This document shows, in pieces, positions 1 through 54,583 of a stretch of 64,000 bases of DNA (position 1 is the first letter of the stretch; each line of letters opens with the position of its first letter). The stretch is taken from positions 1 to 64,000 of the IMG/VR virus record IMGVR_UViG_3300042350_002797; one strand, given 5' to 3'. The notes under the pieces were generated by a model, which was given only the letters and a program-made list of their open reading frames with translations, did no database searches and was not told where the DNA came from. The position numbers were made by a program, and so were the translations under genes.

Positions 1-123
1 TACAGAACCCTACCGTTGAAATTGTACGGACCTTCTAGCCCAGGGTGTGGACAATATGCGTGACAACTATGGTCCACGCCCTGGGCTAGAAGGTCCGTAC
101 AATTTCAACGGTAGGGTTCTGTA
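1..123. repeat. 52-bp inverted repeat (1-52 / 72-123, one T:G mismatch, 19-nt loop) at the window edge
   Basis: Reverse complement of 1-52 equals 72-123 except position 46/78. Confidence 0.95.
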
Positions 124-220
124 CTACGATCCAAAGGAAGGCCAGTACTATGACCCACGCACAGACTTCTACGTCAGCCACTCAGAGTACTTCGAGATGG
201 TAGGCTTTATTGTAAAATAA
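56..220 (+). CDS. Small hypothetical phage protein (54 aa, true 5' end possibly lost in the fold-back)
   Basis: Hand translation MRDNYGPRPGLEGPYNFNGRVLYYDPKEGQYYDPRTDFYVSH..., stop TAA 218-220; below ORF-track cutoff. Confidence 0.65.
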   Translation: MRDNYGPRPGLEGPYNFNGRVLYYDPKEGQYYDPRTDFYVSHSEYFEMVGFIVK

Positions 221-229
221 GGAGTAAAT

Positions 230-403
230 ATGAACTACGCACCGCGACCTTACTATCGTGTAAGCATGAACCGCAAGCGTCAGATCATTGATGCCTGCGT
301 GGACGAGTTGCACAATCAGCAACTGGATATGATTGACGCTGCTGTAGAGTACAGTGATATGCGACAAGCTCGCGAAATTATTGATTATATAAGACAACTA
401 TGA
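230..403 (+). CDS. Small hypothetical protein (57 aa)
   Basis: AAGGAG SD at about 219-224, ATG 230, open to TGA 401-403. Confidence 0.7.
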   Translation: MNYAPRPYYRVSMNRKRQIIDACVDELHNQQLDMIDAAVEYSDMRQAREIIDYIRQL

Positions 404-470
404 CACCTAACACACCTAGATTCCCCGGCGACCCAGCAGACTACGACTTGCCTCCACACACGGACTAGTT

Positions 471-578
471 ATGAATATAACAACCACAGATGCCATAGCC
501 CTGGCCCTACTAATTGTTATAGGAATGTTAACTTTAGTCTACTTGGGCTGGCAGATAGCAGCTCTCTTTTTTGGTTGA
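471..578 (+). CDS. Small membrane peptide (35 aa)
   Basis: MNITTTDAIALALLIVIGMLTLVYLGWQIAALFFG: a single hydrophobic helix; no clear SD. Confidence 0.5.
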   Translation: MNITTTDAIALALLIVIGMLTLVYLGWQIAALFFG

Positions 579-603
579 CAAGTCCACGCTCTGGTGCTAT
601 ACT
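575..603 (+). promoter_or_regulatory. sigma70-type early promoter
   Basis: TTGACA (575-580), 17 bp, TATACT (598-603), extended -10 TG. Confidence 0.9.
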
Positions 604-635
604 ATAGACATAGTAAACAGTAAGGAGCGAAACAA

Positions 636-923
636 ATGCAAAAACATACTTGTCCGGAATGTAACGGATCAACACGTAAACCCTATAACCTAGACCCTAG
701 CTGGAAACGGGTCATTGCTGGCTACGATGCTGCAACAGATACACTACCCTGCCATAACTGCGGTTCACAGTATATGTTCGGCCGTGCTACAGGCTTAGTG
801 GGTCTGAACAGACTGGGCGTACCCTGTACACACATCTACAAAGGTCAGAACGCAGGACGCTGCTTGACAGAGTACACCTGCATCCACTGCGATGATAGAT
901 ATCAAATTGATTCTGGGGATTAA
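636..923 (+). CDS. Zn-finger-like hypothetical protein
   Basis: CPEC, CHNC, CIHC pairs; AAGGAGCG RBS upstream. Confidence 0.8.
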   Translation: MQKHTCPECNGSTRKPYNLDPSWKRVIAGYDAATDTLPCHNCGSQYMFGRATGLVGLNRLGVPCTHIYKGQNAGRCLTEYTCIHCDDRYQIDSGD

Positions 924-930
924 AAAGCGG

Positions 931-959
931 TTGACAATTGGATTGTTTGGTGTTATTAT
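931..959 (+). promoter_or_regulatory. sigma70-type early promoter
   Basis: TTGACA (931-936), 17 bp, TATTAT (954-959), extended -10 TG. Confidence 0.9.
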
Positions 960-989
960 ATACACATACTGAAACATAAGGAGCGTGAA

Positions 990-1178
990 ATGACTGATAC
1001 TAAATTCTACAAAATGATGGGCGTACTGCAACTGCTCATCGCTTTTATTAACTTCTACGTGGCCTTCGGGGCATTGAATACCCTGGCTGTGCTGAACATT
1101 GCTGTGGCTGTTATCTGTACTATGGCTGGCGTGTTCTGCACAGTGTTGGCAGCTAAACTTTTTGGAGCACTAGACTAA
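990..1178 (+). CDS. Small two-helix membrane protein
   Basis: 62 aa, two hydrophobic segments; AAGGAGCG RBS. Confidence 0.75.
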   Translation: MTDTKFYKMMGVLQLLIAFINFYVAFGALNTLAVLNIAVAVICTMAGVFCTVLAAKLFGALD

Positions 1179-1303
1179 TGGGCAAGTTCATACTGGGAGT
1201 AGTAGTAACCTTGGCAGTACTGTACCCAGCTGTGACCAAATACTATTTTGGCAATGCTGTGGACACTACTAATGCTGTGGTTAAAGGCGTAATGGAGAAG
1301 TAA
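1178..1303 (+). CDS. Small membrane/secreted peptide (41 aa)
   Basis: TAATG overlap with the previous stop; MGKFILGVVVTLAVLYPAV... hydrophobic N-terminus. Confidence 0.65.
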   Translation: MGKFILGVVVTLAVLYPAVTKYYFGNAVDTTNAVVKGVMEK

Positions 1304-1304
1304 C

Positions 1305-1685
1305 ATGGACAAAGATACTATGAAGGCCCTACGCGAAGTCGATGTCAACGAACTGTTCGAAGAGTTCGACGCTCAGGGCTATGCTATTGACTGTATCAAC
1401 GGCAACCTAATTCTAGATTACCCCTATGGCAATCAGGACTATTGCACTGGGATCCTAGAGGGAGCAGGCTTTTACAATATCTCTAACGATGAACTAGAAG
1501 CCTGTGAAGCGGGTATACGTGCTAGTTTACAAAGTGTTAACTATCAGCTAGAGCGAATGGATCTAGGCCTAGAAGTAGTCCAGTTAGACCTTACAGACAC
1601 TACCAGCTGGATGATCGTACCCGCAGGTGCTAGCCCAAAAAAGATTGTAAAATCAATCATAAAACGGTTGACAGAAACAGCATAA
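1305..1685 (+). CDS. Acidic hypothetical protein
   Basis: 126-aa ORF with GGAG SD. Confidence 0.75.
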   Translation: MDKDTMKALREVDVNELFEEFDAQGYAIDCINGNLILDYPYGNQDYCTGILEGAGFYNISNDELEACEAGIRASLQSVNYQLERMDLGLEVVQLDLTDTTSWMIVPAGASPKKIVKSIIKRLTETA

Positions 1686-1696
1686 GACTGTATTAT
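1668..1696 (+). promoter_or_regulatory. sigma70-type early promoter
   Basis: TTGACA (1668-1673), 17 bp, TATTAT (1691-1696). Confidence 0.9.
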
Positions 1697-1726
1697 ATAC
1701 ACATACTGTTAAACAAAGGAGCGAAG

Positions 1727-1861
1727 ATGTACACTAAATTTATTATCCGTTTGATTGATGCGATCCCAACACCTACTCCTGAGCAGGGTGATCGTTGGGT
1801 CACATACACTTGTATCTTTGGGTTTGGTTTTATTCTTGGTATGTTGGTAACTGGAGGCTAA
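1727..1861 (+). CDS. Small membrane peptide (44 aa)
   Basis: AAGGAGCGAA RBS then ATG 1727; C-terminal hydrophobic helix; stop TAA 1859-1861. Confidence 0.7.
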   Translation: MYTKFIIRLIDAIPTPTPEQGDRWVTYTCIFGFGFILGMLVTGG

Positions 1862-1863
1862 TC

Positions 1864-2058
1864 ATGCGTACATATGAAAATGTTGTTGAAATCGTAGCAA
1901 ACACACTGAGCCGTGCAGCACTAGGCGGCCCATTTGGATTCTATCTGTCAGATGCACAAATTGCCTACATCTACGGCAAGGACCGTGAAGTAGTAGAGAT
2001 GGACATTCAAATGGCCAAAGATATTGCTAATAAGAGATTGACAGACAGCTTTATCTAA
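1864..2058 (+). CDS. Hypothetical protein (64 aa; start re-called from 1795 to ATG 1864)
   Basis: GGAGG SD before ATG 1864; the longer call overlaps the 1727 ORF. Confidence 0.7.
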   Translation: MRTYENVVEIVANTLSRAALGGPFGFYLSDAQIAYIYGKDREVVEMDIQMAKDIANKRLTDSFI

Positions 2059-2066
2059 GTTATAAT
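2038..2066 (+). promoter_or_regulatory. sigma70-type early promoter (perfect consensus)
   Basis: TTGACA (2038-2043), 17 bp, TATAAT (2061-2066). Confidence 0.92.
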
Positions 2067-2071
2067 ATACA

Positions 2072-2095
2072 CTACACACTAGCAATAGTGTGTAG
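2072..2095 (+). promoter_or_regulatory. 5' leader hairpin, 10-bp stem with GCAA (GNRA) tetraloop
   Basis: CTACACACTA-GCAA-TAGTGTGTAG. Confidence 0.75.
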
Positions 2096-2130
2096 CAATA
2101 TTACACACTTATCAACAGAGCGGAGCTGAA

Positions 2131-2961
2131 ATGAAACATACAATGAACTTTGAAATCCCTAAGCTGAACAAGTCTGTACAAGAAACAGACGAGCAGATCA
2201 AAGAGCGACTGCGTGAGCGTTTTGAGATACTGAACGACATGACCCGTGCTGTAAAGAAGGGTGATGTACGTGCTATGATTGTAACGGGTCCGCCAGGCGT
2301 GGGCAAGAGCTTTGGTGTAGAAGAAGTACTAAGCAAACACGACCTAATGGCCACAGTGGCTAACAACAGCAAGCTTAAGAAGTATGAAGTAGTCAAAGGC
2401 GCTATGAGTGCGCTGGGTCTGTACTCAAAGTTATACGAGTACAAGGACGCTAAGAGTATCCTAGTGTTTGATGACTGCGATAGTGTATTGCAAGATGAAC
2501 TAAGCCTTAACATTCTAAAGGCTGCACTAGACAGTTCTAAGAAGCGTACCATACACTGGAACACTGACAGCAGACTGTTACGTGACCAGGGCGCACCTAA
2601 TAGCTTTGAGTTCAAGGGCGGTGCTATCTTTATCACTAACATTAAGTTTGAGAATGTACGTAGTAAGAAGCTACAGGATCACCTAGCAGCATTAGAGTCA
2701 CGCTGCCACTACTTGGATCTGACTATTGATACAGAGCGCGAGAAGATGCTGCGTATTGAACAGATCATAGAAGACGGCATGCTGTTAGAGTATGAGTTTA
2801 GTCAAGAAGAACAAGCTGAGCTAATCAGCTTTATAGACAACAACAAGAAGAAACTACGCGAACTGTCACTGCGTACAGTACTTAAGATAGCGGACTTGCG
2901 TAAGAGCTTTCCCTATAAGTGGCAAAGTGTAGCAGAGGTTACTTGTATGCGTCGCGGTTGA
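2131..2961 (+). CDS. AAA+/P-loop ATPase
   Basis: Walker A GPPGVGKS, Walker B LVFDD, ALESR arginine-finger-like motif. Confidence 0.85.
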   Translation: MKHTMNFEIPKLNKSVQETDEQIKERLRERFEILNDMTRAVKKGDVRAMIVTGPPGVGKSFGVEEVLSKHDLMATVANNSKLKKYEVVKGAMSALGLYSKLYEYKDAKSILVFDDCDSVLQDELSLNILKAALDSSKKRTIHWNTDSRLLRDQGAPNSFEFKGGAIFITNIKFENVRSKKLQDHLAALESRCHYLDLTIDTEREKMLRIEQIIEDGMLLEYEFSQEEQAELISFIDNNKKKLRELSLRTVLKIADLRKSFPYKWQSVAEVTCMRRG

Positions 2962-3051
2962 TTCGCTCCCAACCAGCATACTAGGTAAGGGCCAAGGTGG
3001 CCCACTTGATCCCCAGTGTCCGATTCGCTCCCGGCTCTGGGGATTTTTTTT
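2956..3051 (+). ncRNA. Candidate structured 3'-UTR/small RNA with two identical AUUCGCUCC loops
   Basis: GGTTG-ATTCGCTCC-CAACC (2956-2974); GGGCC-AAGGT-GGCCC; CCG-ATTCGCTCC-CGG inside the terminator stem ATCCCCAG/CTGGGGAT. Confidence 0.6.
3009..3051 (+). terminator. Rho-independent terminator closing the early region
   Basis: 8-bp GC-rich stem (3009-3016 / 3037-3044) followed by a T run to 3051. Confidence 0.85.
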
Positions 3052-3168
3052 CATCGAGAGATTGAGAAAAAGATTTCGAAAAGATCGGGGGTCGGGGCTT
3101 TATTATTTTGATTTTTTGTTGTTTTTTTGCAACACGTACCGATGCAAAATCACCACCTTGAAAGGAAA

Positions 3169-3250
3169 TAGTAGCTATTTAAAAATTTTCGCAGCTGCCA
3201 AAAACTAACCCCTAGGTACCCGTTTAGTAGCTGTAAAAAATTTTCGCAGC
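3169..3250. repeat. Direct repeat TAGTAGCT-N3/4-AAAAATTTTCGCAGC, two copies
   Basis: Copies at 3169-3195 and 3225-3250; degenerate third copy AAAAATCTTTTGCGGCTGC at 4417-4435. Confidence 0.8.
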
Positions 3251-3278
3251 ACTATTTTTTTATTGTGCAGATACTCTT

Positions 3279-3926
3279 TTACAAGTATCCTGGTCGAACC
3301 ATTGATCGGAAAAATTCACGTTTATGACTAGATTCTTCGCCCCATTCTTTACTAGTTAAATCCTGTATACTAATCTGATTCTCTATGTCCGGAAAGTAGT
3401 TATAAGGTAAAGGGTCTAACGAAAGAGTTAATGTTATTCTTGGTGTAGGGTTATCTTCTGCAAATTCCACACTATGTATTTCCATTGGCCTAATCAAAGT
3501 AGCATCTGTAATTTCACATCGAGTTTGTTCAACTAAATCGTCACGATTATAAGGGTAATATTTCAAGCCATTAGGCAGCATAATTCCACCTTGGTCAACA
3601 TATTCTGGTTTAGGTTCCCAAAATGTAGTCCATGTATTTGCAGTGTTCAATATAGGTATATTAACTCTTATGGGTATCACTGTGCTATCTTTGTGTGGAC
3701 TACCATGTGTGTTATTTTTCATAAAATAAGCACTGACCATAATCACCTTCATATCTAGATGATCAAATGCAGTCAATATTTCTGGAACTGCATCTGTGAA
3801 TTCTTGCCATTTGAAAATGTGAAATGTACTATTATATCTATCTTTAGTTTTACTTATAAATTCTCTAGTTTTAGTCTGTATAGCTTCTAAGTGTTGTACA
3901 GTAATTTTATGCCAATATTTTTTCAT
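3279..3926 (-). CDS. Putative Fe(II)/2OG oxygenase-like or cupin protein
   Basis: HKD (HxD) motif plus distal His in MEIHSVE; TAAATA late-promoter motif and purine-rich leader upstream. Confidence 0.5.
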   Translation of the reverse strand: MKKYWHKITVQHLEAIQTKTREFISKTKDRYNSTFHIFKWQEFTDAVPEILTAFDHLDMKVIMVSAYFMKNNTHGSPHKDSTVIPIRVNIPILNTANTWTTFWEPKPEYVDQGGIMLPNGLKYYPYNRDDLVEQTRCEITDATLIRPMEIHSVEFAEDNPTPRITLTLSLDPLPYNYFPDIENQISIQDLTSKEWGEESSHKREFFRSMVRPGYL

Positions 3927-3962
3927 ATTTCTACTTCTTTCTTTGATTTAATATACGCATAT

Positions 3963-4163
3963 TTATTCCTTAATTCTACACACTGCTTGTATTTGCAATT
4001 CTCTATGATGTATAATGACCTTACGTACTTCTTCGCAAGCAGCATGAGTAGTATACTCATGTTCCCAAGCACGCCATTCACCATCGGCTATGACCAATAC
4101 CCACAGTATCCATACTGTCATTAGTAGAACTCTGCACCTGGACGATATCCACGCTGCTCCCAT
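3963..4163 (-). CDS. Small hypothetical protein (true start probably downstream of 4163)
   Basis: Short ORF with hydrophobic segment and C...C pair, in the - strand gene run. Confidence 0.4.
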   Translation of the reverse strand: MGAAWISSRCRVLLMTVWILWVLVIADGEWRAWEHEYTTHAACEEVRKVIIHHRELQIQAVCRIKE

Positions 4164-4381
4164 TCGCCCAATTTACGGTCATTCCAATATATAAGAAAAT
4201 CGTCTCTACTTTCAAAATATTTTTGGAATTCTTCTGTGATACTTAGACAACTCCACATGTCTTGTCCGCCCAATTCGCCTTTCATGAATTCAGTATCGCA
4301 GTGCCAATACAGTACTTCCAGTTCTTCTCTAGGCAGTTCAGCAGCGTTCAGTGCCACTGTAAGTATAAGTGTTTTGAGCAT
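4121..4381 (-). CDS. Small putative exported protein
   Basis: AAGGAG SD, signal-peptide-like N-terminus, two Cys; TAAATA motif upstream. Confidence 0.6.
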   Translation of the reverse strand: MLKTLILTVALNAAELPREELEVLYWHCDTEFMKGELGGQDMWSCLSITEEFQKYFESRDDFLIYWNDRKLGEWEQRGYRPGAEFY

Positions 4382-4482
4382 GGTTGTGCTCCTTAAATTG
4401 TTATTTATGGGTTGTTAAAAATCTTTTGCGGCTGCGCTGACGCTTCGCGTTAGAGTATCTAGCGCGGTTGCCCTGCAGGTAT

Positions 4483-5337
4483 TCACGCTGGACTGTCTTG
4501 ATCTTTCTGGTCTAGTTTGCGCTTTAACAATGTGCCTAGACCAGTTTTTTTCTTTGGAGTATCCGCAGGTGGTGCAGGCGGCATCATTTTATTAGTACGT
4601 GGTCCAGATTTAATCTCATCATAATCAGGAATACTAGCACCGCCATCACTAATTGGATCCATCAAGACCAGTTGTGGTCCTACACTACTGCCACGCACAC
4701 GTATATTGTTCACGTGCAGATCCACATTCCAGTCTGGGTTTTCCTGTATAATTTTATCAATCAACAACAGTGCTTCTTTAAGTTGATCATCACGTATGTT
4801 TGTGTAGTTACTGCGTTCTACAGCACGATTAATTTGATTGGATATTTCTCTCCATACTGCATATGATTTGTTAGTAGTTCCTTCTAGATAACGCATATTG
4901 AATTCGTCGTTGAACAAACGTTCGTACATGCCAATAAGTGTTCTAGCTGGAAAGCTATCGCCCTGCTGTAGTTTTTCTATACGATAACGTGGACGTTGAT
5001 TACCCTTAGGATCTTGTGTAATGTCTATGTTATAGACCTGTGGAAAGAATGGATTGTGATAGCCCTGCTGTTTTAAGTCACGTATTTCCATAACGTACTT
5101 ATAGTAAGCATCTTTATCCAGTTTAGCAGTAAGATGTGGTTTCTTAATAAATTCGTGTGGATCGCGGGGATTAGTTTGTCCGCCACTGTACCAGCCTGGT
5201 TGTACGCCTTTGTTAAGTTCGCTGTCATTGTCGCGTTCTTGTTTGTCTTTAAGGGCATCAAAGTCAAAGCTAGGTTTACGATATCTTATCTTTTGATCAG
5301 TAGTATCGTATTCTTGTAGTATTTCTATAATTCGCAT
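4483..5337 (-). CDS. Protein-kinase-like (PKL) fold protein
   Basis: GWYSG glycine-loop-like, FIKK lysine, DLHVNN catalytic loop, LMDP metal-binding motif. Confidence 0.6.
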   Translation of the reverse strand: MRIIEILQEYDTTDQKIRYRKPSFDFDALKDKQERDNDSELNKGVQPGWYSGGQTNPRDPHEFIKKPHLTAKLDKDAYYKYVMEIRDLKQQGYHNPFFPQVYNIDITQDPKGNQRPRYRIEKLQQGDSFPARTLIGMYERLFNDEFNMRYLEGTTNKSYAVWREISNQINRAVERSNYTNIRDDQLKEALLLIDKIIQENPDWNVDLHVNNIRVRGSSVGPQLVLMDPISDGGASIPDYDEIKSGPRTNKMMPPAPPADTPKKKTGLGTLLKRKLDQKDQDSPA

Positions 5338-5437
5338 GTGTATATTTAATCGTGATTACCGTAATCTGTATTTTTTAACATAACGACTATAACTGCTATC
5401 ACTATAAGTAGGAGAAATAAATTTATTAGATCAAACA

Positions 5438-5677
5438 TTATTTTAGTCCTTTTTTTCTGTTAGATTCTGCTATACCTGACTGTATCATTTTTTTAAACAT
5501 TAATACTACACGACTTTTTTCTTTTTCGCTGAGTATTTTTACTAGTGTAAGTTTATCGTCATAGCTTTTGGCATTGTCCAGGAATTCAGCCGGTACTGCC
5601 AATTTAGGCTTTTTCTTAGCCATTTCTTTCTTCATATTAGCTAGGGCCTTGTCAGGGTCGTCGTTATCAGTAGTCAT
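5438..5677 (-). CDS. Hypothetical basic protein
   Basis: 79-aa ORF, AAAGGA SD, TAAATA upstream. Confidence 0.65.
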   Translation of the reverse strand: MTTDNDDPDKALANMKKEMAKKKPKLAVPAEFLDNAKSYDDKLTLVKILSEKEKSRVVLMFKKMIQSGIAESNRKKGLK

Positions 5678-5703
5678 AGTGATCCTTTCTAAGTCTATTT
5701 TAT

Positions 5704-6483
5704 TTACTTAGGTTCGCAGTCCACCCAACGTAAATTATTATAGTGTTCATAGGGCCACGTACCCTTAGGTACTAAACAAGTGCCTAATTCAGGTTGGTGT
5801 TCCATGCGTATTTGTACCACAGCCCATATTAACCAAATAAGATATAATATAGCCACAGTACTGCTAGACCAGCACAGTATTTTATATTGTATGCGTTTTT
5901 TGCGACGTGCCCGAATCTTCTTTTGTTCTGCTGTTCGTCGCATCTCTGCAGCAATGACAATACTTTGTTCTTTGCCCACTTTCTTCATCATCTCTTCGAC
6001 ATCAAGATACAATGGACCTAATTCTGGTGGACTTTGATAGACCATAATTTCACGCAATTCTGCGCTCATGTGTTCTAGTTGTTTTTTAAGTAATACTCGC
6101 ATTAATGCACGTTTACCTAAACTGTCTTCGCCGTGATATACTTCAGTTCTGCTGCGACGTTCTTCTTCTTCAAATACTGCTAGACATTTATAATAGTTGT
6201 CAAAATATGTTCCAAGATGTTGGCCAATTTCTGTATAGATGTTAGTAGTTTCGCCACCCTTTTTGTTCAGTTCTATTATGCGATTTTTTTCTGTGATAAA
6301 CTGATTACGTTCAGCCACAGTAGGTTGACGATCCTTGAATTTATTGGCGAATTGGTCGTCAAGGTCTTTAAGGATATCTTTGACATCCCCAGCAGCACCT
6401 TTAATTTCTTTATATAGTTCGCACCCTTTTTTGACCGCCTGGACTGCTCCGTTGGCCAGGGCAAAAAGGGTTAGCGGATCCAA
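5704..6483 (-). CDS. Coiled-coil protein with C-terminal transmembrane helix (TTG start)
   Basis: 259 aa; basic stretch RARRKKR then hydrophobic helix; GGAG upstream of TTG. Confidence 0.75.
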   Translation of the reverse strand: MDPLTLFALANGAVQAVKKGCELYKEIKGAAGDVKDILKDLDDQFANKFKDRQPTVAERNQFITEKNRIIELNKKGGETTNIYTEIGQHLGTYFDNYYKCLAVFEEEERRSRTEVYHGEDSLGKRALMRVLLKKQLEHMSAELREIMVYQSPPELGPLYLDVEEMMKKVGKEQSIVIAAEMRRTAEQKKIRARRKKRIQYKILCWSSSTVAILYLIWLIWAVVQIRMEHQPELGTCLVPKGTWPYEHYNNLRWVDCEPK

Positions 6484-6531
6484 GATCTAGATCTCCGCAT
6501 GGTTCGCTCCAAATTGTTCGCTCAGTAGTAT

Positions 6532-6975
6532 TTACTTGGAGGAGCTATCTTTAGGGTACCATGGTGTCATTCTAGGACTGTTTTGTACACTGTAATTCAT
6601 GCATTCGGCTAAAAATTCAAAATTACGGCTCAGCGTATTGAATAAATGATAGTTGATCTGTTCTGCGTGGCTATAGCTGGCTTTGCCTATTTGATAAAAG
6701 TAATCTTGATTGATGCCACGTCGTTCTAGCATATTAGGAAACACTGCGGCTGCAAACAGTGCTTGATCTCCTAATACCTTAGCTGCATGAGCTGTTTGAA
6801 TAGATAATAGTGTTTCAGCCCAACTAGGCTGAGGTTGCCAGTCAGGTTTATCAGTATAGTTTGCTAATACCGCACTCATATATTGTTCTATATAAGTAGG
6901 TATAGGCCAACCATGACGATGTTTAGCTTGGTCTATGATATCAAACCAAGCTGAATAGTACTCAGGTTCAATCAT
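6532..6975 (-). CDS. Hypothetical helical protein
   Basis: 147-aa ORF directly after TATAAATA (6983-6990). Confidence 0.75.
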   Translation of the reverse strand: MIEPEYYSAWFDIIDQAKHRHGWPIPTYIEQYMSAVLANYTDKPDWQPQPSWAETLLSIQTAHAAKVLGDQALFAAAVFPNMLERRGINQDYFYQIGKASYSHAEQINYHLFNTLSRNFEFLAECMNYSVQNSPRMTPWYPKDSSSK

Positions 6976-47655: not shown

Positions 47656-48086
47656 AAGATTCGATTGAATGCTCGGGTGCATTTATTTTTGCAAGATCGA
47701 CTCGCAGATTTTTGTTTCTACAAAAGCGTCACGGAAAGCACAGTGATAACTGGGTGCTAGTCGGAGGCACTAACAATCAGGGAGAGACTATTTTTCAAGG
47801 TTTACAAAGAGAAATAGAAGAAGAATTAGGACATGTTCCTGATATTTTAAAAACAATACCTTTAGAAAAATTCGTAAGTAATGATAGCCTTTTCAATTTT
47901 CATACATTTTTTTGTCTAGTAGAAAATGAATTTATTCCTATTTTAAGTGACGAACATCAAGCATGGGGATGGTTTCAATTAGATTCGCCTCCTAAACCTT
48001 TACATAAGGCATTGGATCTTAGTCTTCGCAATAAAATAATTCAGACTAAGATCCAATCAATCATAGATATTTCTGACAGTCTTTAA
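47637..48086 (+). CDS. Nudix hydrolase (start re-called to ATG 47637)
   Basis: Nudix box GGTNNQGETIFQGLQREIEEELG. Confidence 0.88.
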   Translation: METRTIKDSIECSGAFIFARSTRRFLFLQKRHGKHSDNWVLVGGTNNQGETIFQGLQREIEEELGHVPDILKTIPLEKFVSNDSLFNFHTFFCLVENEFIPILSDEHQAWGWFQLDSPPKPLHKALDLSLRNKIIQTKIQSIIDISDSL

Positions 48087-51000
48087 GCTTGCGCCTCACC
48101 CCAACGTAAAATAATATTAGAATTAACAGTTGTACCAGACGCTTTATAAACGTTAATTGCTAACACATCAGGCCCATTTGGATAAGTTCCTCTGCCACCC
48201 AATGTAGTATTAGTAAGTTCTTTTAATTCTGCTAGATCCAGTTCGCCGCTTTCTCCAGGTTGTGAAATAAATGAAAATACTGTTTCTCCTGGTAGTGCAT
48301 ATGGTGGTTGACCAAATCTGAAGGTAATTACTTCTGCTGGAGATTGAGCAGAAATACTAGTTTGATTAAATTGAACCCTATAGTAAGTTGTTCCATTAAA
48401 TGTTTGTTCTGTGCTTACATTACTAATTCTAGTACCTGCTGGAAAATCACTTAATAATGTAGTTGTTCCTAAAGTTGTTGTTAATGTTCCGGCTACAACT
48501 GATGTCGAAACAACAAAAGTAAATGTAGTTGCACCCACAGTTGCTACAGTCCAAGTTCCATTAAGTTTAGTCTGTTCTGTTCCTGTAGCACCTGATATAG
48601 TAATTCTATTACCTACTCCGATTACGTTAGCAGTAGCGGCTATAGTACCAGTTACAGTTGTTGTTCCGTTGCCAATAAAATTAGTTATTGTTAAACTACT
48701 ATCTATAGAAACTTCTGTACCTACTCCTGCACCATTAGTATTCACTAAATTAGTCCAGCTTGCACTAGTAAAAAAAACAAAGTTTGTGTTACCTGTACTT
48801 TGTCTTACACTTAGCTGCACGTTAGCAGCAGCATTTACTGAGCTAGTACTGTTTAAACTTGTATTGACTTGATAGTAAGGAGTGTGGCTAAAAGTTATTG
48901 TTCTACTGCCTGAAATACTAGCCGCTACTCCACTAAAGACAACTCTTGTATAAGTTATTCCTGCAAATGATCTTCCAGTGTTAATTGTATTGATCGTTCT
49001 AGGTGTAGGAAAGGTAGTTGCATCATTAGTAGTTGCTCCTACTATACTACAATCTAAAGGCAAATTATTCCAACTTGAAGAAGTAAAATATAAATTGTCT
49101 AAATTATTTGAATAAGTTCCGCCTAGACTAAAAGTAGCATTGCTATCTCTACTTGCTCCAAAAGTACTTGCACTCATTGTCAAAGTATAATATGTTCTGC
49201 CACTGGCTGAACTTGGTCCTGATACATTGGTCACATATGTTCCGCTTGGGAAGCCACCGCCGTTGATGGTCATTCCAACTGTGGAGACAGGATTTACATT
49301 GTTGGACCATTCAAAGGCTCTAGCATAATAAAGATTAGTGCCAAAGGATATATCAAATTCTAACCTCACATTACCAGTAGTAAGTTGGTCAATAGTTGTG
49401 GCTGTAGGACTGCTGCTAGCAGAAATAGTAGTAATAGTTGTTCCAGAAGGATACTTACCGTCGTTTATGGTTGATCCGGTGGTAGCACCAATACTAGTCC
49501 AACTAGCCTGCGTCGCGTAAAAGAAACTAGACCCTGATGATCTGTTAAATACCGAATTGTTGGGTACAGTTAAATTACCGTTGATATCTGTTTGTAATGT
49601 TGCTCCTGCTGTTGTTTGCGATCCACTGTTCCATGTTACTGATCCGCCGGGTGCTATTTGTGCAAAGCTAGGCTGGCCACCAGCTGCTAGACTGCTTAGT
49701 CCGCCCCACGAAATTTGGCTAGGATCAGTAGGATAGTTGCTAGGATTTAATACACCCTCAACAACTATACCACCAGACCCTGTATCAGATGTAATCGCTA
49801 TACCTTTTAACAATAGTTGCGCACGGTTTAATAATTCTCGTTCTCCTAAATCTCCAACAATAGCATTACTAATACTTGGTGCAAGTCTAATCAGAAACGC
49901 TGTCTGTTTAGTAGTACTGACTGATACACCAGTACTTGCATAACTGAAAATATATCCTCGATCTTCATCAAATAATCCGTCCATTAGGAATGCACTACCC
50001 CAATGACTAATAATTGGGCTAGTTGTACAGCTGACTAAGATTACTCCTGTATTAAATTCGTGTGTGCTTGCTGGTCCCGCAGTAAATGTTCGTAATGACC
50101 CTGCTATAAAACTAGTCAGTGATGCAGCTCTTGTACAATTTAGCAAAGTATTTCCAGATTTTCCGTTATATGAAATGAGTTCATTGTCTATATACACAAT
50201 CGCTGTCTCATTAGGAAAATCCCTAGCATCTACTAACGGTATACTAGTAGCTAGAGCACTTATAGAACTGGCTAATTTATCTCTTGCTGACTCATTATGT
50301 ACTTCGTAGCGAACAGGTTGGTTACCTGTTCTCATATAGGCTTCTGTGTTAACGTTACTATTTCTCATTCTATGAAAGAAAATAAAATTGCCGTCACTGC
50401 CTCGTAACATAAAATCAATAAAACCTACAGCATACCAAGACCATTGCATACCAATCATCTGCATTTTAGTAATATCAATGTTAAATCCGCTAGGGCCTGT
50501 TCCATCTAATCTATCAATATTAAAATCCTGTTGTTTAACTACATAATCTGATACTAGACAAATTTTAGAAGCCACAGCATCTACTGCTCCTCTATAATCT
50601 GGAGCAACAGTCATTGATGTTTGACTGGTAATACGTGTAACTACATGTGTCATTCCTTTAATAACAATTCTATCTCCTGCCTTAATCTGATCTCTAAATC
50701 TAGTATTAACTCCTGTCATTAAATTAGTATCTTTGGTAATATTGACTACACCGGCTAATTGTTGAGTAGAACTACGTCTAACCACAGCAAAATCGTTACC
50801 ATCATATTGGAAAAACAATCCATTTTGATCGTCATGTGTGCCTGCTCGGACAGTGGCGCCGTGCCATTGATACGTAGACATTAATGCATTTGGACCTAAT
50901 ACAGCAGTTGTATTCGCTAGGACTGTTTGTGCTAAGACCTTGAACTGACGTTCATTAATTATTTCAGTAACTGTATAAGTTCCGTTGTAACCAAAAGTTT

Positions 51001-54000
51001 CAATTCCTATAATTTTTATTCTACTACCAATTTGTAATCCATGATCAACATCATCCATTACAAAAGTAATATCCGATCCTATAGTTACATCTTCTGCTGT
51101 AGCACTTTGAATGTTTACACTAGGTGCAAACAAAGCGCCTGTACAGTAATTTACACCTTTACCTGATTGATAACGAATATATTTTTTACTCATACGAATC
51201 GCTTGCGAACCGTGCTGTGGACCGCCTGTGCCTAACTGTACACCACCATCATATGGTCGATGTACAAAGTATGCATCAGATCGTGTATAAATTGTTCCGG
51301 TAAGAGCAACTGCTGTATCAACAGTTCCAGCAGTTCTTGCTGTATACCTTAAACTTGTTACAGAAGGAACTTGCTCTACAAAAAATGGCCCTGCTGCTAA
51401 TGAATGATTAGATCCGGCGCTGGTTATCCGTGTTGTTATACTTGCTCCTGGAAGTAATCCATGAGCTGTAGAAAAACTAACCTCTATTAACGCTATTCCA
51501 CTATAATTTAAAGTTGTACTTGTTGGAATAGTTGCTGTTGTTACACTGCTTAATAAAAGAACAGAATAAAATGATATGCTACTACCTAATGTAGCTGTTC
51601 CAGTTACTACGGCTGCTGAACTCACTCCAGACCCACTTATTCCTGATACCGAGATAATTAAGTCGTTAGTCGGACTGGTGCCTCCTAAACTTGTTCCTAG
51701 AATTAGTATTCTATTTCCTACTCTATAATTTGTTCCAGCCGCAGAGACTGCACTAACTGTATAAGATCCCGCAGATTTACTAATAGTAAATTGTGCTCCT
51801 GATCCATTATTAGCTACGTTATTTGCGGTTAAAGATGTAAATGTAGCATCAGTGCCTACAGCGTTACCGTCATAGCTAAATGACACAATCGATCCGCTTA
51901 CACCTAAAGTTATCACAGTAATTTCTAAATCATTAGCAGGACTAGCGCCACCTAAGTTTGTACCTAAAATTGTAATTACATCACCAATATTATAATCAAT
52001 ACCAGAATTATTCAAAGAAACGGCATAAGTACCTGCTGAAGAATCGCCTAAATCACTGCGTAGAATATTCCAAGTAGCACCTGTTCCTGTTGCTGTTGAA
52101 TCTATAGCTGTAACAAAATCTTGAGATACATTGCTATAAGTAAATGTTTTTACTACTGAAGTTCCAGTAAAAGTTATGGCAGTAATTTCACCTGCTCCTC
52201 CTATACTAGAGACTGTAACTGTTATATCATTAGTTGGACTTGTACCTTCTAAGAATGTACCTTCTATCGTAAGTTGGTCACCAATATTATAACCTGTTCC
52301 TGCATTGTTTATGACCACTGTATCATAAACGTTGTTAGTTCGTGTAACATTAAAGGTAGCACTAGTTCCTGAAGCTGCTACAGTAGTACCTGATACAGAC
52401 AAATAGCTAGCAGTGCCTCCGGTAAACCCTGTTGTTGTTGGTCCTGATAACGATACTGTTGATCCTACTATCTGAGTAACAAATATAGAAGTGCCTGAAC
52501 CATTATCAATAGCAGATCCTTCTACTATTCCAGAAACTGAATCAAATATAATACTAGTAGCACCTGAACTAACAGTTGTATTCACAGTCTGAGTTGCAAC
52601 TACACCACCAGATCCTATCACTCCTGATACTTGTGTACCAGTATCTATACCTGTTCCGGTTATTGGAGATCCAGTTGAAGGAGCGGTGCCAGTAAAGGCT
52701 AATCTATTAGAAGATATTGTTGTAGAAAAAACTGTATTAATTGTGCCAGTAGTACCATTAGAAAACACGCTGAATACTGGATTACCAACAGGTGCTCCTG
52801 TATAAAATTCTGCTTTTCTTAACTGTGTATATGTAGTTGCTAGCACTTGACCATTGCTACTTCCTACTTTAGCTGTGGCATAATAAGTAAATGTTGTTGC
52901 GCTAGGAACAGAATTCACTAAAAAAGTGCCTTCGGCTCTACTAAATCCTGTAATAGTATTTGCTAATGCTTTAATTGTAAAAGGCATACCTACTGTAAAT
53001 CCATGTGCTCCAGCAGTAGTCACTGTAATCAGACTAGAACCTACACCAGTAATTGCATTACCAGTACTAGCATCAGTAGTAACATTTAGTACAGAAGTAT
53101 CTGATCCTGGTACTTCATATGAACTAGGATATCCTCGTAAAAGACCAATGGCTTGCCATTTAGTAGGCTGTAGTCCATATTCAAAGTCAGCATCAAGCAT
53201 ACTCTGAGATGCAGCAACTCGCATACGTTCGATTGCATCTGTTCCGTAATCGTATGGCCGTACTCTAGTTTCCTTTTCTTCTACAAAAATTTGTATGTCA
53301 TCAAACGCTGTCGCAGTAGACGTATCTGCTTCTAAATAAATTGTAGTTACGTAATCTGCACGATCTCTAAATGCTCCAAAATTATCATCTTTATAGAAAA
53401 AATTACTAACATAACCTGTGTCTACTATAACCGATGCCCCTAAACTTGGTGCAGCAAAATTAAAAAGAACTGTATTGCTGGTCGAGTTAGTAATTAAAAG
53501 TAAGTCATTTATATCAAATTTGCCTAAAAGTCTAATTGTAGAAACTCCATTAGACAATACAGGTAAACTGCTTAATCCGTTTTGTAAAACTGCTATAAAA
53601 CTGTTAGATAATGATGTGATTCTTGATGCTGCGCCAGCTTCGCCAGCTGTTCCAGTAGTGACTTGAGCTTCCGTCACAGGACTTTGTTCTGAAGTATAAA
53701 CTGATTTAGTAATTACGTAGTTATTAATTAAATTACGTACAAATGTTTGTGCAGTAATTTCAGGTAACCGATCTCCGCTTAGTTGTGAAACACTGCCATT
53801 CCAGAATCTTGATGAAATGTAGTAAGTCTTAGCATTACCTCCATATCTTAAATCATGCAAGTAAGCATCTATAACTAATCCTATGTCTCGATCACATTTA
53901 GAGTCATCATACACATACCCAGCGTAATTGTAAACTGATGAAACAACAGCAGGTAGTGTAGACAAGCCGCCATCTATAACATCTATAATAATAGGTTTTA

Positions 54001-54583
54001 AATTGTTAGTGATAGAAGTAGCAACACCTGCTTCAGCATTTGCACCTGTTAAATTTTGAGTGCTTGTTACAGGACTTTGATCACTAGAGTAAGCTACACC
54101 TGGTAAGATATAATCTGTGATGATTGTAAATATTTGTTCAAATCCTAAAATTTCCTGGGTAGGACTTATGAGTTGTGCTACACCACCTTGCCAAAAATTT
54201 CTAGCAATGTCAATAGTTTTTTCGTTACCACCATATCTGACATCATATGTAATTGCATCGAGTAGCAATCCTGTGTCTCTTCTACACGAAGCTTCACTGT
54301 AAGTGTATCCGGACCAAATAGGGCCGCCGCCTGCTACTTGTGCTGCTACCCAAGCAATAATTTCATCTATTATGAATTGTTTATTATTAGTTAATCTTAG
54401 TACTGCGTTAGGATAAAGATTTTCAGCATTATCTTCTGTTATTCTAGCATTAATGTACGCAACTGCTTCTGCTTTAATAAATTCTTTATTTGATTGAATC
54501 AAAGCATATGCATTAGGATAGGCGTTAGAGGAGTATGATACCCCTGGTGAAAATACATAGTCGTCTATCTTTCTTTTTCCCAT
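48083..54583 (-). CDS. Very large virion structural / tail-fibre protein (2166 aa)
   Basis: Two helical repeats C.RD.GL..DA...D.RYGGN.KT, DADFEYGLQPTKW domain, long S/T/G-rich beta repeats. Confidence 0.75.
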   Translation of the reverse strand: MGKRKIDDYVFSPGVSYSSNAYPNAYALIQSNKEFIKAEAVAYINARITEDNAENLYPNAVLRLTNNKQFIIDEIIAWVAAQVAGGGPIWSGYTYSEASCRRDTGLLLDAITYDVRYGGNEKTIDIARNFWQGGVAQLISPTQEILGFEQIFTIITDYILPGVAYSSDQSPVTSTQNLTGANAEAGVATSITNNLKPIIIDVIDGGLSTLPAVVSSVYNYAGYVYDDSKCDRDIGLVIDAYLHDLRYGGNAKTYYISSRFWNGSVSQLSGDRLPEITAQTFVRNLINNYVITKSVYTSEQSPVTEAQVTTGTAGEAGAASRITSLSNSFIAVLQNGLSSLPVLSNGVSTIRLLGKFDINDLLLITNSTSNTVLFNFAAPSLGASVIVDTGYVSNFFYKDDNFGAFRDRADYVTTIYLEADTSTATAFDDIQIFVEEKETRVRPYDYGTDAIERMRVAASQSMLDADFEYGLQPTKWQAIGLLRGYPSSYEVPGSDTSVLNVTTDASTGNAITGVGSSLITVTTAGAHGFTVGMPFTIKALANTITGFSRAEGTFLVNSVPSATTFTYYATAKVGSSNGQVLATTYTQLRKAEFYTGAPVGNPVFSVFSNGTTGTINTVFSTTISSNRLAFTGTAPSTGSPITGTGIDTGTQVSGVIGSGGVVATQTVNTTVSSGATSIIFDSVSGIVEGSAIDNGSGTSIFVTQIVGSTVSLSGPTTTGFTGGTASYLSVSGTTVAASGTSATFNVTRTNNVYDTVVINNAGTGYNIGDQLTIEGTFLEGTSPTNDITVTVSSIGGAGEITAITFTGTSVVKTFTYSNVSQDFVTAIDSTATGTGATWNILRSDLGDSSAGTYAVSLNNSGIDYNIGDVITILGTNLGGASPANDLEITVITLGVSGSIVSFSYDGNAVGTDATFTSLTANNVANNGSGAQFTISKSAGSYTVSAVSAAGTNYRVGNRILILGTSLGGTSPTNDLIISVSGISGSGVSSAAVVTGTATLGSSISFYSVLLLSSVTTATIPTSTTLNYSGIALIEVSFSTAHGLLPGASITTRITSAGSNHSLAAGPFFVEQVPSVTSLRYTARTAGTVDTAVALTGTIYTRSDAYFVHRPYDGGVQLGTGGPQHGSQAIRMSKKYIRYQSGKGVNYCTGALFAPSVNIQSATAEDVTIGSDITFVMDDVDHGLQIGSRIKIIGIETFGYNGTYTVTEIINERQFKVLAQTVLANTTAVLGPNALMSTYQWHGATVRAGTHDDQNGLFFQYDGNDFAVVRRSSTQQLAGVVNITKDTNLMTGVNTRFRDQIKAGDRIVIKGMTHVVTRITSQTSMTVAPDYRGAVDAVASKICLVSDYVVKQQDFNIDRLDGTGPSGFNIDITKMQMIGMQWSWYAVGFIDFMLRGSDGNFIFFHRMRNSNVNTEAYMRTGNQPVRYEVHNESARDKLASSISALATSIPLVDARDFPNETAIVYIDNELISYNGKSGNTLLNCTRAASLTSFIAGSLRTFTAGPASTHEFNTGVILVSCTTSPIISHWGSAFLMDGLFDEDRGYIFSYASTGVSVSTTKQTAFLIRLAPSISNAIVGDLGERELLNRAQLLLKGIAITSDTGSGGIVVEGVLNPSNYPTDPSQISWGGLSSLAAGGQPSFAQIAPGGSVTWNSGSQTTAGATLQTDINGNLTVPNNSVFNRSSGSSFFYATQASWTSIGATTGSTINDGKYPSGTTITTISASSSPTATTIDQLTTGNVRLEFDISFGTNLYYARAFEWSNNVNPVSTVGMTINGGGFPSGTYVTNVSGPSSASGRTYYTLTMSASTFGASRDSNATFSLGGTYSNNLDNLYFTSSSWNNLPLDCSIVGATTNDATTFPTPRTINTINTGRSFAGITYTRVVFSGVAASISGSRTITFSHTPYYQVNTSLNSTSSVNAAANVQLSVRQSTGNTNFVFFTSASWTNLVNTNGAGVGTEVSIDSSLTITNFIGNGTTTVTGTIAATANVIGVGNRITISGATGTEQTKLNGTWTVATVGATTFTFVVSTSVVAGTLTTTLGTTTLLSDFPAGTRISNVSTEQTFNGTTYYRVQFNQTSISAQSPAEVITFRFGQPPYALPGETVFSFISQPGESGELDLAELKELTNTTLGGRGTYPNGPDVLAINVYKASGTTVNSNIILRWGEAQA

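What the first reader, a model, noticed from the sequence alone, without database searches (positions are those of the whole stretch)
2956..3051. Candidate anti-Shine-Dalgarno antisense RNA: two hairpins display the same loop, complementary to the early RBS
Seen directly: hairpin 1 GGTTG-[ATTCGCTCC]-CAACC (2956-2974, over the ATPase stop codon), a middle hairpin GGGCC-AAGGT-GGCCC, and hairpin 3 CCG-[ATTCGCTCC]-CGG nested in the terminator stem. The stems differ but the 9-nt loops are identical, which points to selection on the exposed sequence. AUUCGCUCC is the reverse complement of GGAGCGAAU, an 8-nt match to the RBSs at 624-631 and 1718-1725, a 6-nt match at 980-985, and matches two sites at 6501-6523. 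With its flank, GAUUCGCUCC also matches the 16S tail GAUCACCUCC at 7 of 10 positions. Inference: the last early transcript yields a trans-acting RNA that masks early RBSs (negative feedback or early-to-late switch), loosely analogous to the multi-loop C4 antisense RNA of phage P1. Leaderless late mRNAs would be immune.
Basis: partly seen in the sequence, partly recalled or inferred. Interest (0 to 1): 0.9.

Follow-up and report, generated by a model that had tools for sequence, protein, structure and literature searches.

The report
Anti-ribosome-site hairpin loops ending early operon
At the end of this uncultivated jumbo phage's early operon sit RNA hairpins whose loop never changes across more than 200 related phage contigs and is the exact complement of an unusual ribosome-binding site on the phage's early genes, so it probably masks those sites; this is untested.

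Summary
The repeat is the 11-mer G-AUUCGCUCC-C at 2960-2970 and 3022-3032. It forms the loop of a hairpin over the ATPase stop codon and the loop of the intrinsic terminator.

- **Conservation:** In IMG/VR relatives the loop is invariant in more than 200 distinct hairpins.
- **Stem covariation:** 98.6% of cells pair against 68% in shuffles, and all 8 outer pairs covary.
- **Strand:** G·U outnumbers A·C 24 to 2, which points to a + strand RNA.
- **Loop core:** Rare loop variants leave only UCGCUCC untouched.
- **Target:** That core is the exact complement of GGAGCGA. GGAGCGA is the extended Shine-Dalgarno of the first gene behind nearly every sigma-70 early promoter in these phages (577 of 628), and it is absent from convergent non-early genes.

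The likeliest mechanism is a 3'-UTR anti-Shine-Dalgarno RNA that pairs with early ribosome sites (7-9 bp, about -14 kcal/mol) and damps early translation, in trans or in cis.

Not shown:
- a discrete RNA species;
- repression;
- loop-RBS covariation, which cannot be tested because the loop core never varies.

There is no match in Rfam (including P1 C4), no cultured relative, and the host is unknown. I class it as a new variant of a known regulatory kind. Interest 0.7.

The parts
2945..2981 (+). Hairpin 1: outer stem GTATGC/GCATAC, apical stem GGTTG/CAACC, 9-nt loop AUUCGCUCC (2961-2969). The ATPase stop codon (2959-2961) lies inside it.
   Evidence: Sequence; folds. In relatives, folding each 5' arm with its own 3' arm gives -9.6 kcal/mol against -3.9 with a swapped arm.
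2989..3003 (+). Middle hairpin GGGCC-AAGGT-GGCCC. It carries no conserved loop. In many relatives this position holds an A-run / GC hairpin / T-run terminator.
3011..3051 (+). Hairpin 3, the intrinsic terminator: CCCCAG/CTGGGG outer stem, CCG/CGG apical stem, loop AUUCGCUCC (3023-3031), T8 tract (3044-3051).
   Evidence: Covariance-model hit at 3009-3046, 43 bits. Covariation statistics. G·U 24 against A·C 2.
624..631 (+). Extended Shine-Dalgarno GGAGCGAA of ORF 636-923, behind promoter 575-603. Predicted target, -14.3 kcal/mol.
980..985 (+). GGAGCG Shine-Dalgarno of ORF 990-1178, behind promoter 931-959. A 6-nt match, -11.2 kcal/mol.
1718..1725 (+). Extended Shine-Dalgarno GGAGCGAA of ORF 1727-1861, behind promoter 1668-1696. 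Predicted target, -14.1 kcal/mol.
2116..2124 (+). Degenerate RBS GAGCGGAGC of the ATPase gene, behind promoter 2038-2066. In most relatives this RBS is a full AGGAGCGAAC.
2131..2961 (+). AAA ATPase gene (T4 NrdC.10-like, phrog_1250), the last gene of the early operon.
6498..6534 (-). A late-type TAAATA promoter followed by two tandem copies of the target motif (GAGCGAAC, then GGAGCGAAC) and the ATG of a 9-codon mini-ORF. Candidate two-site partner for the two loops.
   Evidence: Conserved only in the closest relatives.

Best explanation
The hairpins are a conserved 3'-UTR RNA module of the early operon. It displays one to three copies of an anti-Shine-Dalgarno loop with the core UCGCUCC.

Early transcripts start at sigma-70 promoters about 13 nt upstream of a private extended Shine-Dalgarno, AGGAGCGA(A). 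This site still binds ribosomes through AGGAG, but it also carries a CGA(A) tag.

The loops pair with that tag plus GGAG (7-9 bp). The pairing could occur in trans, after the structured 3' end outlives the mRNA body, or in cis within each co-terminated transcript. Either way it occludes the ribosome site and lowers translation of early genes specifically. Middle and late messages lack the tag, or lack a leader altogether, and are left untouched.

What is shown: the conserved structure, the strand, the complementarity, the co-occurrence and the early specificity. What is inferred: that pairing happens, the direction of the effect, and whether it acts in trans or in cis.
For: **1. The loop 11-mer is conserved across the family.**
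- It is exact in 113 IMG/VR stretches as a pair and in more than 120 as the single 15-mer.
- There are 208-248 distinct hairpin contexts.
- The loop columns are invariant in 91 distinct terminator hairpins.

**2. The stems covary.**
- 98.6% of cells pair against 68% in shuffles.
- 322 cells have changes on both sides against 85.
- The covariation score is 0.69 against 0.16, with slid controls at or below 0.12. All 8 outer pairs covary.
- Folding own arms against swapped arms gives -18.1 against -8.2 kcal/mol.

**3. The folded molecule is the + strand RNA.**
- G·U 24 against A·C 2, and the T-tract lies on the + strand.

**4. Rare loop variants spare only UCGCUCC.**
- Variants seen: GAAUCGCUCCC, GACUCGCUCCC, an A..U closing pair, and 7-nt loops G-UCGCUCC-C.
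- One variant is C to U, which still allows a G·U pair.

**5. The target is conserved and early-specific.**
- In 739 GGAG-N4-10-ATG contexts upstream of the element, the next base is C in 77%, and CGA follows in 316.
- CGA follows in 0 of 55 convergent downstream genes.
- 577 of 628 GGAGCGA sites lie behind a TTGACA-N16-18-TAnnnT promoter, with the -10 hexamer ending a median 20 nt upstream.
- C after GGAG is a mismatch to the canonical 16S CCUCC. This rests on established knowledge of the anti-SD, not on a test run here. Ribosome binding therefore does not explain its conservation.

**6. Loops and tagged RBSs co-occur on the same strand in other operons of related contigs** (193 same strand against 13 opposite).

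**7. Energetics.**
- Duplex energies are -14.3, -14.1 and -14.1 kcal/mol for full targets, against -6 to -10 for other starts.
- Only 13 of 2134 ATG contexts in the window reach -12.
- The loops are 96-98% unpaired.

**8. The loop contains a YUNR-type UUCG turn.** This is read from the sequence and is only a weak argument.
Against: - The loop core never varies, so there is no loop-RBS covariation. The complementarity is one fixed observation, although it is repeated over many RBSs.
- In this phage only 3 of 8 early RBSs match 8 nt and the rest match 6 nt (GGAGCG-UG/UA). The ATPase RBS itself is degenerate.
- In some relatives (L020, L080) most early RBSs share only GGAGC.
- No separate promoter was found for a small RNA. 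The loops are made 1:1 with early mRNAs, so action in trans requires the 3' end to be more stable than the mRNA body, which is unknown.
- There are two loops per genome region against many RBSs.
- Seven to nine base pairs without a known chaperone is a modest interaction.
- Part of the complementarity (CUCC against GGAG) is what any C-rich loop would give.
- There are no expression data, no cultured relative and no known host.
Confidence: 0.5

Rival explanations
1. The loops are a sequence-specific binding site for a protein, from the phage or the host. Candidates include a factor controlling mRNA stability, 3'-end processing, termination efficiency or localisation. On this reading the complementarity to the early RBS is incidental, or reflects competition rather than direct RNA-RNA pairing.
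For: An invariant 7-11 nt loop presented on variable stems, with a fixed closing pair and a conserved 5' bulge (RUAARY, with an R-Y pair that covaries GC:44 / AU:35), is typical of protein-recognised hairpins. The loop is far more conserved than any single RBS. The hairpin always sits right after a stop codon.
Against: It does not explain why the conserved 7-nt loop core is the exact reverse complement of the conserved 7-nt early RBS core on the same transcripts. It also does not explain the anti-optimal C after GGAG. No linked candidate RNA-binding gene was found: the neighbouring genes differ between contexts (an AAA ATPase, a winged-helix protein, an unknown protein).
Confidence: 0.2
2. The same loop-RBS pairing occurs but serves a positive or protective role. 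For example, it could join the 5' and 3' ends of early mRNAs to shield them from 5'-end-dependent or Shine-Dalgarno-directed RNases (a RegB-like activity or a host defence), or to delay decay, rather than to repress translation.
For: Every tagged RBS is the 5'-proximal one, about 13 nt from the predicted transcript start. In the window all four promoters co-terminate at hairpin 3, so each transcript carries both partners. In most relatives the ATPase's own RBS carries the full tag.
Against: Pairing over the Shine-Dalgarno necessarily competes with 30S binding. Operons ending in the winged-helix or the unknown gene place the loop about 1.9 kb from the tagged RBS. There is no evidence of an SD-directed nuclease in the window.
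Confidence: 0.15
3. The motif acts at the DNA level. It could be a recombination or shuffling site of PeSL-type promoter/terminator cassettes, a protein operator used in both orientations, or part of an adjacent replication origin.
For: The early genes are organised as PeSL-like cassettes of terminator, sigma-70 promoter and Shine-Dalgarno (PMC2839356, PMC4122927). The 15-mer occurs in both orientations in viral contigs. A conserved G-rich / AT-rich / hairpin region follows the terminator.
Against: Stem covariation with G·U 24 against A·C 2 requires a folded + strand RNA, not duplex DNA. PeSL stem-loops conserve their stems (GGGG...CCCC), not their loops (PMC2839356). The reverse-orientation hits are simply ribosome sites. 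The other operon-end contexts are followed by ordinary genes, not the origin-like region.
Confidence: 0.07

Closest known systems
icaR mRNA 3'-UTR anti-SD motif of Staphylococcus aureus (PMC3868564; review PMC5502269)
   Same: A C-rich anti-Shine-Dalgarno motif in the 3'-UTR of an mRNA is complementary to the ribosome site at the 5' end of the same transcript and is thought to block initiation.
   Different: Here the motif sits in hairpin loops, in 1-3 identical copies, one of them in the terminator loop. It matches a private extension shared by many early genes, a regulon rather than one gene. It is in a lytic jumbo phage. RNase III processing and repression are untested.
Multi-hairpin sRNAs with identical C-rich loops that mask SD sequences (S. 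aureus RNAIII and Rsa RNAs with UCCC loops); from my own knowledge, not checked here
   Same: Several hairpins display the same unpaired C-rich loop complementary to the Shine-Dalgarno regions of several target mRNAs.
   Different: No own promoter, and located at an operon's 3' end. The loop is longer and specific for GGAGCGA rather than generic GGGA/GGAG. There is no homology.
Phage P1/P7 C4 antisense RNA (Rfam RF01695)
   Same: A phage RNA with two exposed segments complementary to two sites at a ribosome-binding region. The tandem sites at 6498-6522(-) echo this.
   Different: No sequence or structure match. C4 is processed from the 5' part of its own target transcript in a temperate phage's immunity region and controls one operon.
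T4 RegB shut-off of early mRNAs through GGAG in early SD sequences (PMC3014915)
   Same: Early genes carry a distinctive Shine-Dalgarno that allows their selective post-transcriptional silencing. The phage is distantly T4-like (NrdC.10-like ATPase, TAAATA late-type promoters).
   Different: The proposed effector here is an RNA loop, not an endonuclease. No RegB homologue was seen.
PeSL promoter/terminator/SD cassettes of T4-type phages (PMC2839356, PMC4122927)
   Same: The early region is built from repeated near-consensus sigma-70 promoters at a fixed distance from a conserved Shine-Dalgarno, often just after a stem-loop and T-run.
   Different: PeSL stem-loops conserve GC stems and have no conserved loop complementary to the Shine-Dalgarno. 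Their proposed role is recombination.

Membership tests
Intrinsic (Rho-independent) terminator | GC-rich hairpin immediately followed by a U-tract on the transcribed strand | tested here: met
   3011-3042 followed by T8 at 3044-3051. A T-run follows hairpin 3 in nearly all relatives.
Trans-acting anti-SD sRNA | Unpaired loop complementary to the SD region of target mRNAs | tested here: met
   Loops are 96-98% unpaired. There are 8-nt matches at 624, 1718 and 6503(-), with duplexes of about -14 kcal/mol. The complement GGAGCGA is found family-wide.
Trans-acting anti-SD sRNA | A discrete, stable RNA species with its own promoter or a defined processing site | not testable with these tools
   No promoter is visible upstream of hairpin 1, which lies in coding sequence. 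No transcript data are available.
Trans-acting anti-SD sRNA | Repression of targets that is restored by compensatory mutations | not testable with these tools
   This needs an experiment.
Trans-acting anti-SD sRNA | Covariation between the regulator seed and its target sites across lineages | tested here: inconclusive
   The loop core is invariant. The variable loop positions (A1, U2) face the variable RBS positions 8-9, and one C-to-U variant remains G·U-compatible. This is suggestive, not a test.
cis 3'-UTR/5'-UTR anti-SD pairing (icaR type) | Anti-SD motif and its SD partner on the same transcript | tested here: met
   Four promoters (575, 931, 1668, 2038) have no intervening terminator before 3011-3051. 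The ATPase RBS is tagged in most relatives.
P1 C4 antisense RNA (RF01695) and any other Rfam family | A match to the family covariance model | tested here: not met
   No hit at gathering thresholds in 64 kb. Over 2850-3350 only chance-level hits (E of 0.96 or more) to unrelated families.
PeSL cassette | Stem-loop with a conserved GC stem next to a sigma-70 promoter and an SD | tested here: inconclusive
   The promoter-plus-SD part fits. The hairpins in question instead have variable stems and a conserved loop.
Lambdoid nut site (boxA/boxB) | Single-stranded boxA CGCUCUUUA upstream of a boxB hairpin, placed ahead of the terminators it overrides | tested here: not met
   The motif reads UCGCUCC(C), shares only CGCUC with boxA, lies inside hairpin loops, and one copy is in the terminator's own loop. 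The consensus is recalled from my own knowledge.
tRNA-like T-loop or tRNA fragment | A tRNA or tmRNA gene call, or a UUCRANY 7-nt T-loop | tested here: not met
   ARAGORN finds nothing in the window. The loop is 9 nt and has C where A58 would be.

The most novel reading that the evidence does not exclude
A large clade of uncultivated freshwater jumbo phages uses a private RNA code. Every sigma-70-driven early message carries a tagged Shine-Dalgarno (GGAGCGA), and structured 3' ends of early operons carry the matching loop. Together these form a phage-wide anti-SD regulon that times or caps early translation. It would be an RNA-only counterpart of T4 RegB, and the first 3'-UTR-derived global regulator described in a lytic phage.
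Probability: 0.35. Interest if true: 0.85.

Novelty: new variant of a known kind. Interest (0 to 1): 0.7.

Why it matters
If the pairing is functional, it shows how a large lytic phage can switch off a whole temporal class of genes with a short RNA loop and a private extension of the ribosome-binding site.

It would add a conserved structured RNA family, absent from Rfam, from phages known only from metagenomes.

It is also directly testable in E. coli reporters, because the promoters and the AGGAG core are E. coli-like.

The tag and loop pair would be a compact orthogonal translation-control device.

Even if the loops turn out to bind a protein, an 11-nt loop frozen across hundreds of phage genomes marks an important unknown interaction.

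Tried and rejected
- **Cultured phages:** megablast and blastn of 1-6000 and 1-3300 against cultured phage genomes found no match. There is therefore no annotated or experimental relative.
- **Protein neighbours:** a tblastn search with the ATPase only places it with T4 NrdC.10-like and PA5oct proteins at 49% identity or less.
- **Rfam:** nothing at gathering or permissive thresholds.
- **tRNA scan:** none found.
- **Bacterial and archaeal genomes:** scanning for the double motif gave 72 hits, but on inspection they are tandem repeats that happen to contain the 11-mer. Only L343, a freshwater MAG contig, is a true element. This gave no host clue.
- **Covariation by plain alignment:** MAFFT plus RNAalifold on hairpin 3 aligned only the 3 apical pairs, because the bulges shift the register. 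I replaced this with a covariance-model alignment and an own-versus-swapped arm folding test.
- **Loop variants for a covariation test:** only peripheral variants exist.
- **Reverse-orientation 15-mer hits:** these are ribosome sites in a small hairpin behind TAAATA promoters in one homologous locus, and are compatible with chance given how common the RBS is.
- **Antisense late promoter:** a TAAATA promoter at 3186-3181(-) points into the element, but it is present in only 10 of 95 relatives, so it is not part of the conserved system.
- **16S idea:** I considered that the loop might target GGAGCGAAC in 16S helix 24. This was recalled from memory, was not tested, and I judged it unlikely.
- **Literature:** a search for the motif returned only primers and other unrelated uses.

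Full report
**What is in the window.** The window is the first 64 kb of a 364-kb IMG/VR contig. It is a low-GC myovirus-type jumbo phage encoding a 1147-aa tail sheath, a large terminase and a DnaB-like helicase. It has no DNA relative among cultured phages.

Positions 1-3051 form a rightward early region with 45% GC, against 29-40% elsewhere. It has four near-consensus sigma-70 promoters at 575, 931, 1668 and 2038. Each is followed after about 20 nt by a Shine-Dalgarno and a small ORF. The last gene is a T4 NrdC.10-like AAA ATPase at 2131-2961. From 3279 onward the genes run leftward, so the element lies at a convergent boundary.

The repeated unit is 11 nt, G-AUUCGCUCC-C, at 2960-2970 and 3022-3032. 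The first copy overlaps the ATPase stop codon. The second is the apical loop of an intrinsic terminator (CCCCAG/CTGGGG followed by T8).

Within the window alone, the pair of 11-mers is only modestly improbable. GGAGCGAA is clearly enriched, at 7 sites against 0.8 expected.

**Conservation of the hairpins.**
- The pattern GATTCGCTCCC-N40-70-GATTCGCTCCC is exact in 113 viral contig stretches. These give 95 distinct elements whose ATPase is 73-100% identical to ours.
- The spacing, the middle hairpin and all stems differ between elements. The 11-mer does not.
- The apical stems include CCG/CGG, GUG/CAC, CUG/CAG, UUG/CAA, UUUA/UAAA and CUAG/CUAG.
- Folding each 5' arm with its own 3' arm gives -18.1 kcal/mol for hairpin 3 and -9.6 for hairpin 1. 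Swapped arms give -8.2 and -3.9.
- A covariance model of hairpin 3 recovered 107 hits in 100 sources.
- On that alignment 98.6% of cells pair (68% in shuffles), 322 cells changed on both sides (85 expected), and the covariation score is 0.69 (0.16 in shuffles; 0.12 or less when partners are slid). All eight outer pairs covary. The alignment was fitted to the model's structure, which favours that structure. The arm-swap test does not depend on the alignment.
- G·U pairs outnumber A·C 24 to 2, and the T-tract follows on the + strand. The folded molecule is therefore the + strand transcript.
- Rare loop variants change or delete only the first two loop bases, or swap the closing G-C for A-U. One changes a C to U. 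The invariant core is UCGCUCC.

**The partner sequence.**
- In relatives, the first gene after almost every early promoter has AGGAGCGA(A/C) as its ribosome site.
- Without pre-selecting for the motif, 739 GGAG-N4-10-ATG contexts upstream of the element have C at the next position in 77%, and CGA follows in 316. None of 55 such contexts in the convergent downstream genes has CGA.
- Of 628 distinct GGAGCGA sites, 577 lie behind a TTGACA-N16-18-TAnnnT promoter whose -10 hexamer ends a median 20 nt upstream. The tag therefore sits about 13 nt from the 5' end of early transcripts.
- The leader between the -10 hexamer and the tag is variable (A/C-rich), so the conservation is specific to the tag.
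- C after GGAG mismatches the canonical 16S CCUCC (established knowledge). Ribosome affinity therefore does not explain it.
- GGAGCGA is the exact reverse complement of the loop core.
- The conservation gradients mirror each other. The variable loop bases A1 and U2 face the variable RBS positions 8 and 9.
- The loop is much more conserved than any single RBS, as expected for one regulator with many targets.

**The motif in other operons.**
- The 15-mer CCGATTCGCTCCCGG also follows the stop codons of two other small genes in related contigs: a winged-helix protein and a protein of unknown function. It sits upstream of a separate terminator. Some of these contigs also carry the ATPase-type element.
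- In those contigs tagged RBSs are again abundant on the same strand (193 against 13 on the opposite strand).
- The module is thus [stop codon]-[loop hairpin(s)]-[terminator] at the ends of early operons.

**This phage in particular.**
- A 98.9%-identical contig (L137) extends 9 kb further upstream. It shows eight promoter-RBS cassettes feeding towards the element.
- Three of the RBSs are GGAGCGAA and five are GGAGCG-UG/UA. Only the two loop sites are present.
- Predicted duplexes are -14.3 kcal/mol (624), -14.1 (1718), -14.1 (6503, - strand), -11.2 (980) and -10.4 (ATPase RBS). Other starts give -6 to -10. Only 13 of 2134 ATG contexts in the window reach -12.

**Late genes.**
- Many leftward genes have ordinary GGAG sites with AT-rich spacers.
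- Several follow TAAATA-N5-ATG, consistent with leaderless late messages from T4-type late promoters.
- One TAAATA promoter at 6534(-) drives a leader with two tandem copies of the target motif and a 9-codon ORF. This is a possible two-site partner for the two loops, but it is conserved only in the closest relatives.

**Mechanism.** I consider direct loop-RBS pairing that occludes the early Shine-Dalgarno the best explanation (confidence 0.5).
- Shown: a conserved + strand RNA structure, exposed invariant loops, exact complementarity to a conserved early-specific tag, and co-occurrence of the two.
- Inferred: that they pair, that the result is repression, and whether the 3' end acts as a released sRNA or in cis.

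Rivals are protein recognition of the loop (0.2), pairing with a protective role (0.15) and a DNA-level role (0.07). The G·U asymmetry argues against the DNA-level role.

**Comparison with known systems.** It works like the icaR 3'-UTR anti-SD pairing (PMC3868564) and like multi-loop C-rich sRNAs. It would achieve what T4 RegB achieves for early mRNAs (PMC3014915). It is not a member of the P1 C4 family or of any other Rfam family. The promoter-SD cassettes resemble PeSLs (PMC2839356, PMC4122927), but PeSL stem-loops conserve their stems, not their loops.

**Verdict.**
- It is a new variant of a known regulatory kind and a new conserved RNA motif of uncultivated phages.
- Interest 0.7.

Noticed in passing
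window 1-122: The first ~60 bases are a perfect inverted copy of 62-122. A 98.9%-identical contig (L137) instead has an ordinary early promoter-RBS cassette there. The foldback looks like an assembly artefact at the contig end.
   Followed up: partly
window 3085-3135; relatives: Downstream of the terminator's T-tract (3044-3051), most relatives share a G-rich box (GGGGGTCGGGG), an AT-rich stretch and a TTGTTG-T-run-CAACA hairpin. It could be an origin or a special promoter at the early/convergent boundary. Function unknown.
   Followed up: partly
window 3170-3196 and 3219-3245: Two copies of TAGTAGCT..AAAA(A)TTTTCGCAGC. On the - strand the first contains a late-type TAAATAgctact promoter (3186-3181) pointing into the terminator and the ATPase gene as an antisense transcript. 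It is not conserved (10 of 95 relatives).
   Followed up: partly
window - strand: 34896, 38568, 33289, 25666, 6988, 5348: TAAATA followed 5-7 nt later by the ATG of large ORFs (terminase, structural genes). This suggests T4-type late promoters producing leaderless mRNAs. Others (44928, 42712, 36209) have TAAATAct.. leaders with ordinary SD sites.
   Followed up: partly
window 6471-6534 (-): A TAAATA promoter, tandem GAGCGAAC/GGAGCGAAC motifs and a 9-codon mini-ORF (MRRSRSWIR) overlapping the TTG start of ORF 5704-6483, then a long CCCTTTTT..AAAAAGGG hairpin. The 93% relative has three motif copies.
   Followed up: partly
window 545-603 and L137 upstream region: Early promoters are often preceded by a hairpin plus T-run (for example 545-564 plus TCTTTTTTGG before TTGACA at 575). 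This gives PeSL-like terminator/promoter/SD cassettes. There are eight cassettes in 9.7 kb of this phage.
   Followed up: partly
window 1-3051 versus the rest: The early region has 45% GC, against 29-40% for the rest of the window.
   Followed up: no
window 636-923 (+): The first tagged early ORF (95 aa) is Cys-rich with several CxxC pairs, like a zinc ribbon. It has no Pfam or PHROG match.
   Followed up: no
window 48083-54583 (-), 55633-57447 (-): A 2166-aa ORF of unknown function, and a Nol-like carbamoyltransferase (phrog_1601, E = 1.7e-169).
   Followed up: no
relatives, e.g. L043, L063, L070 middle hairpin: In one subgroup the middle hairpin carries its own conserved inner motif (..CGCC-AACAA-GGCAA..) inside covarying stems. 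It may be a second conserved RNA feature.
   Followed up: no
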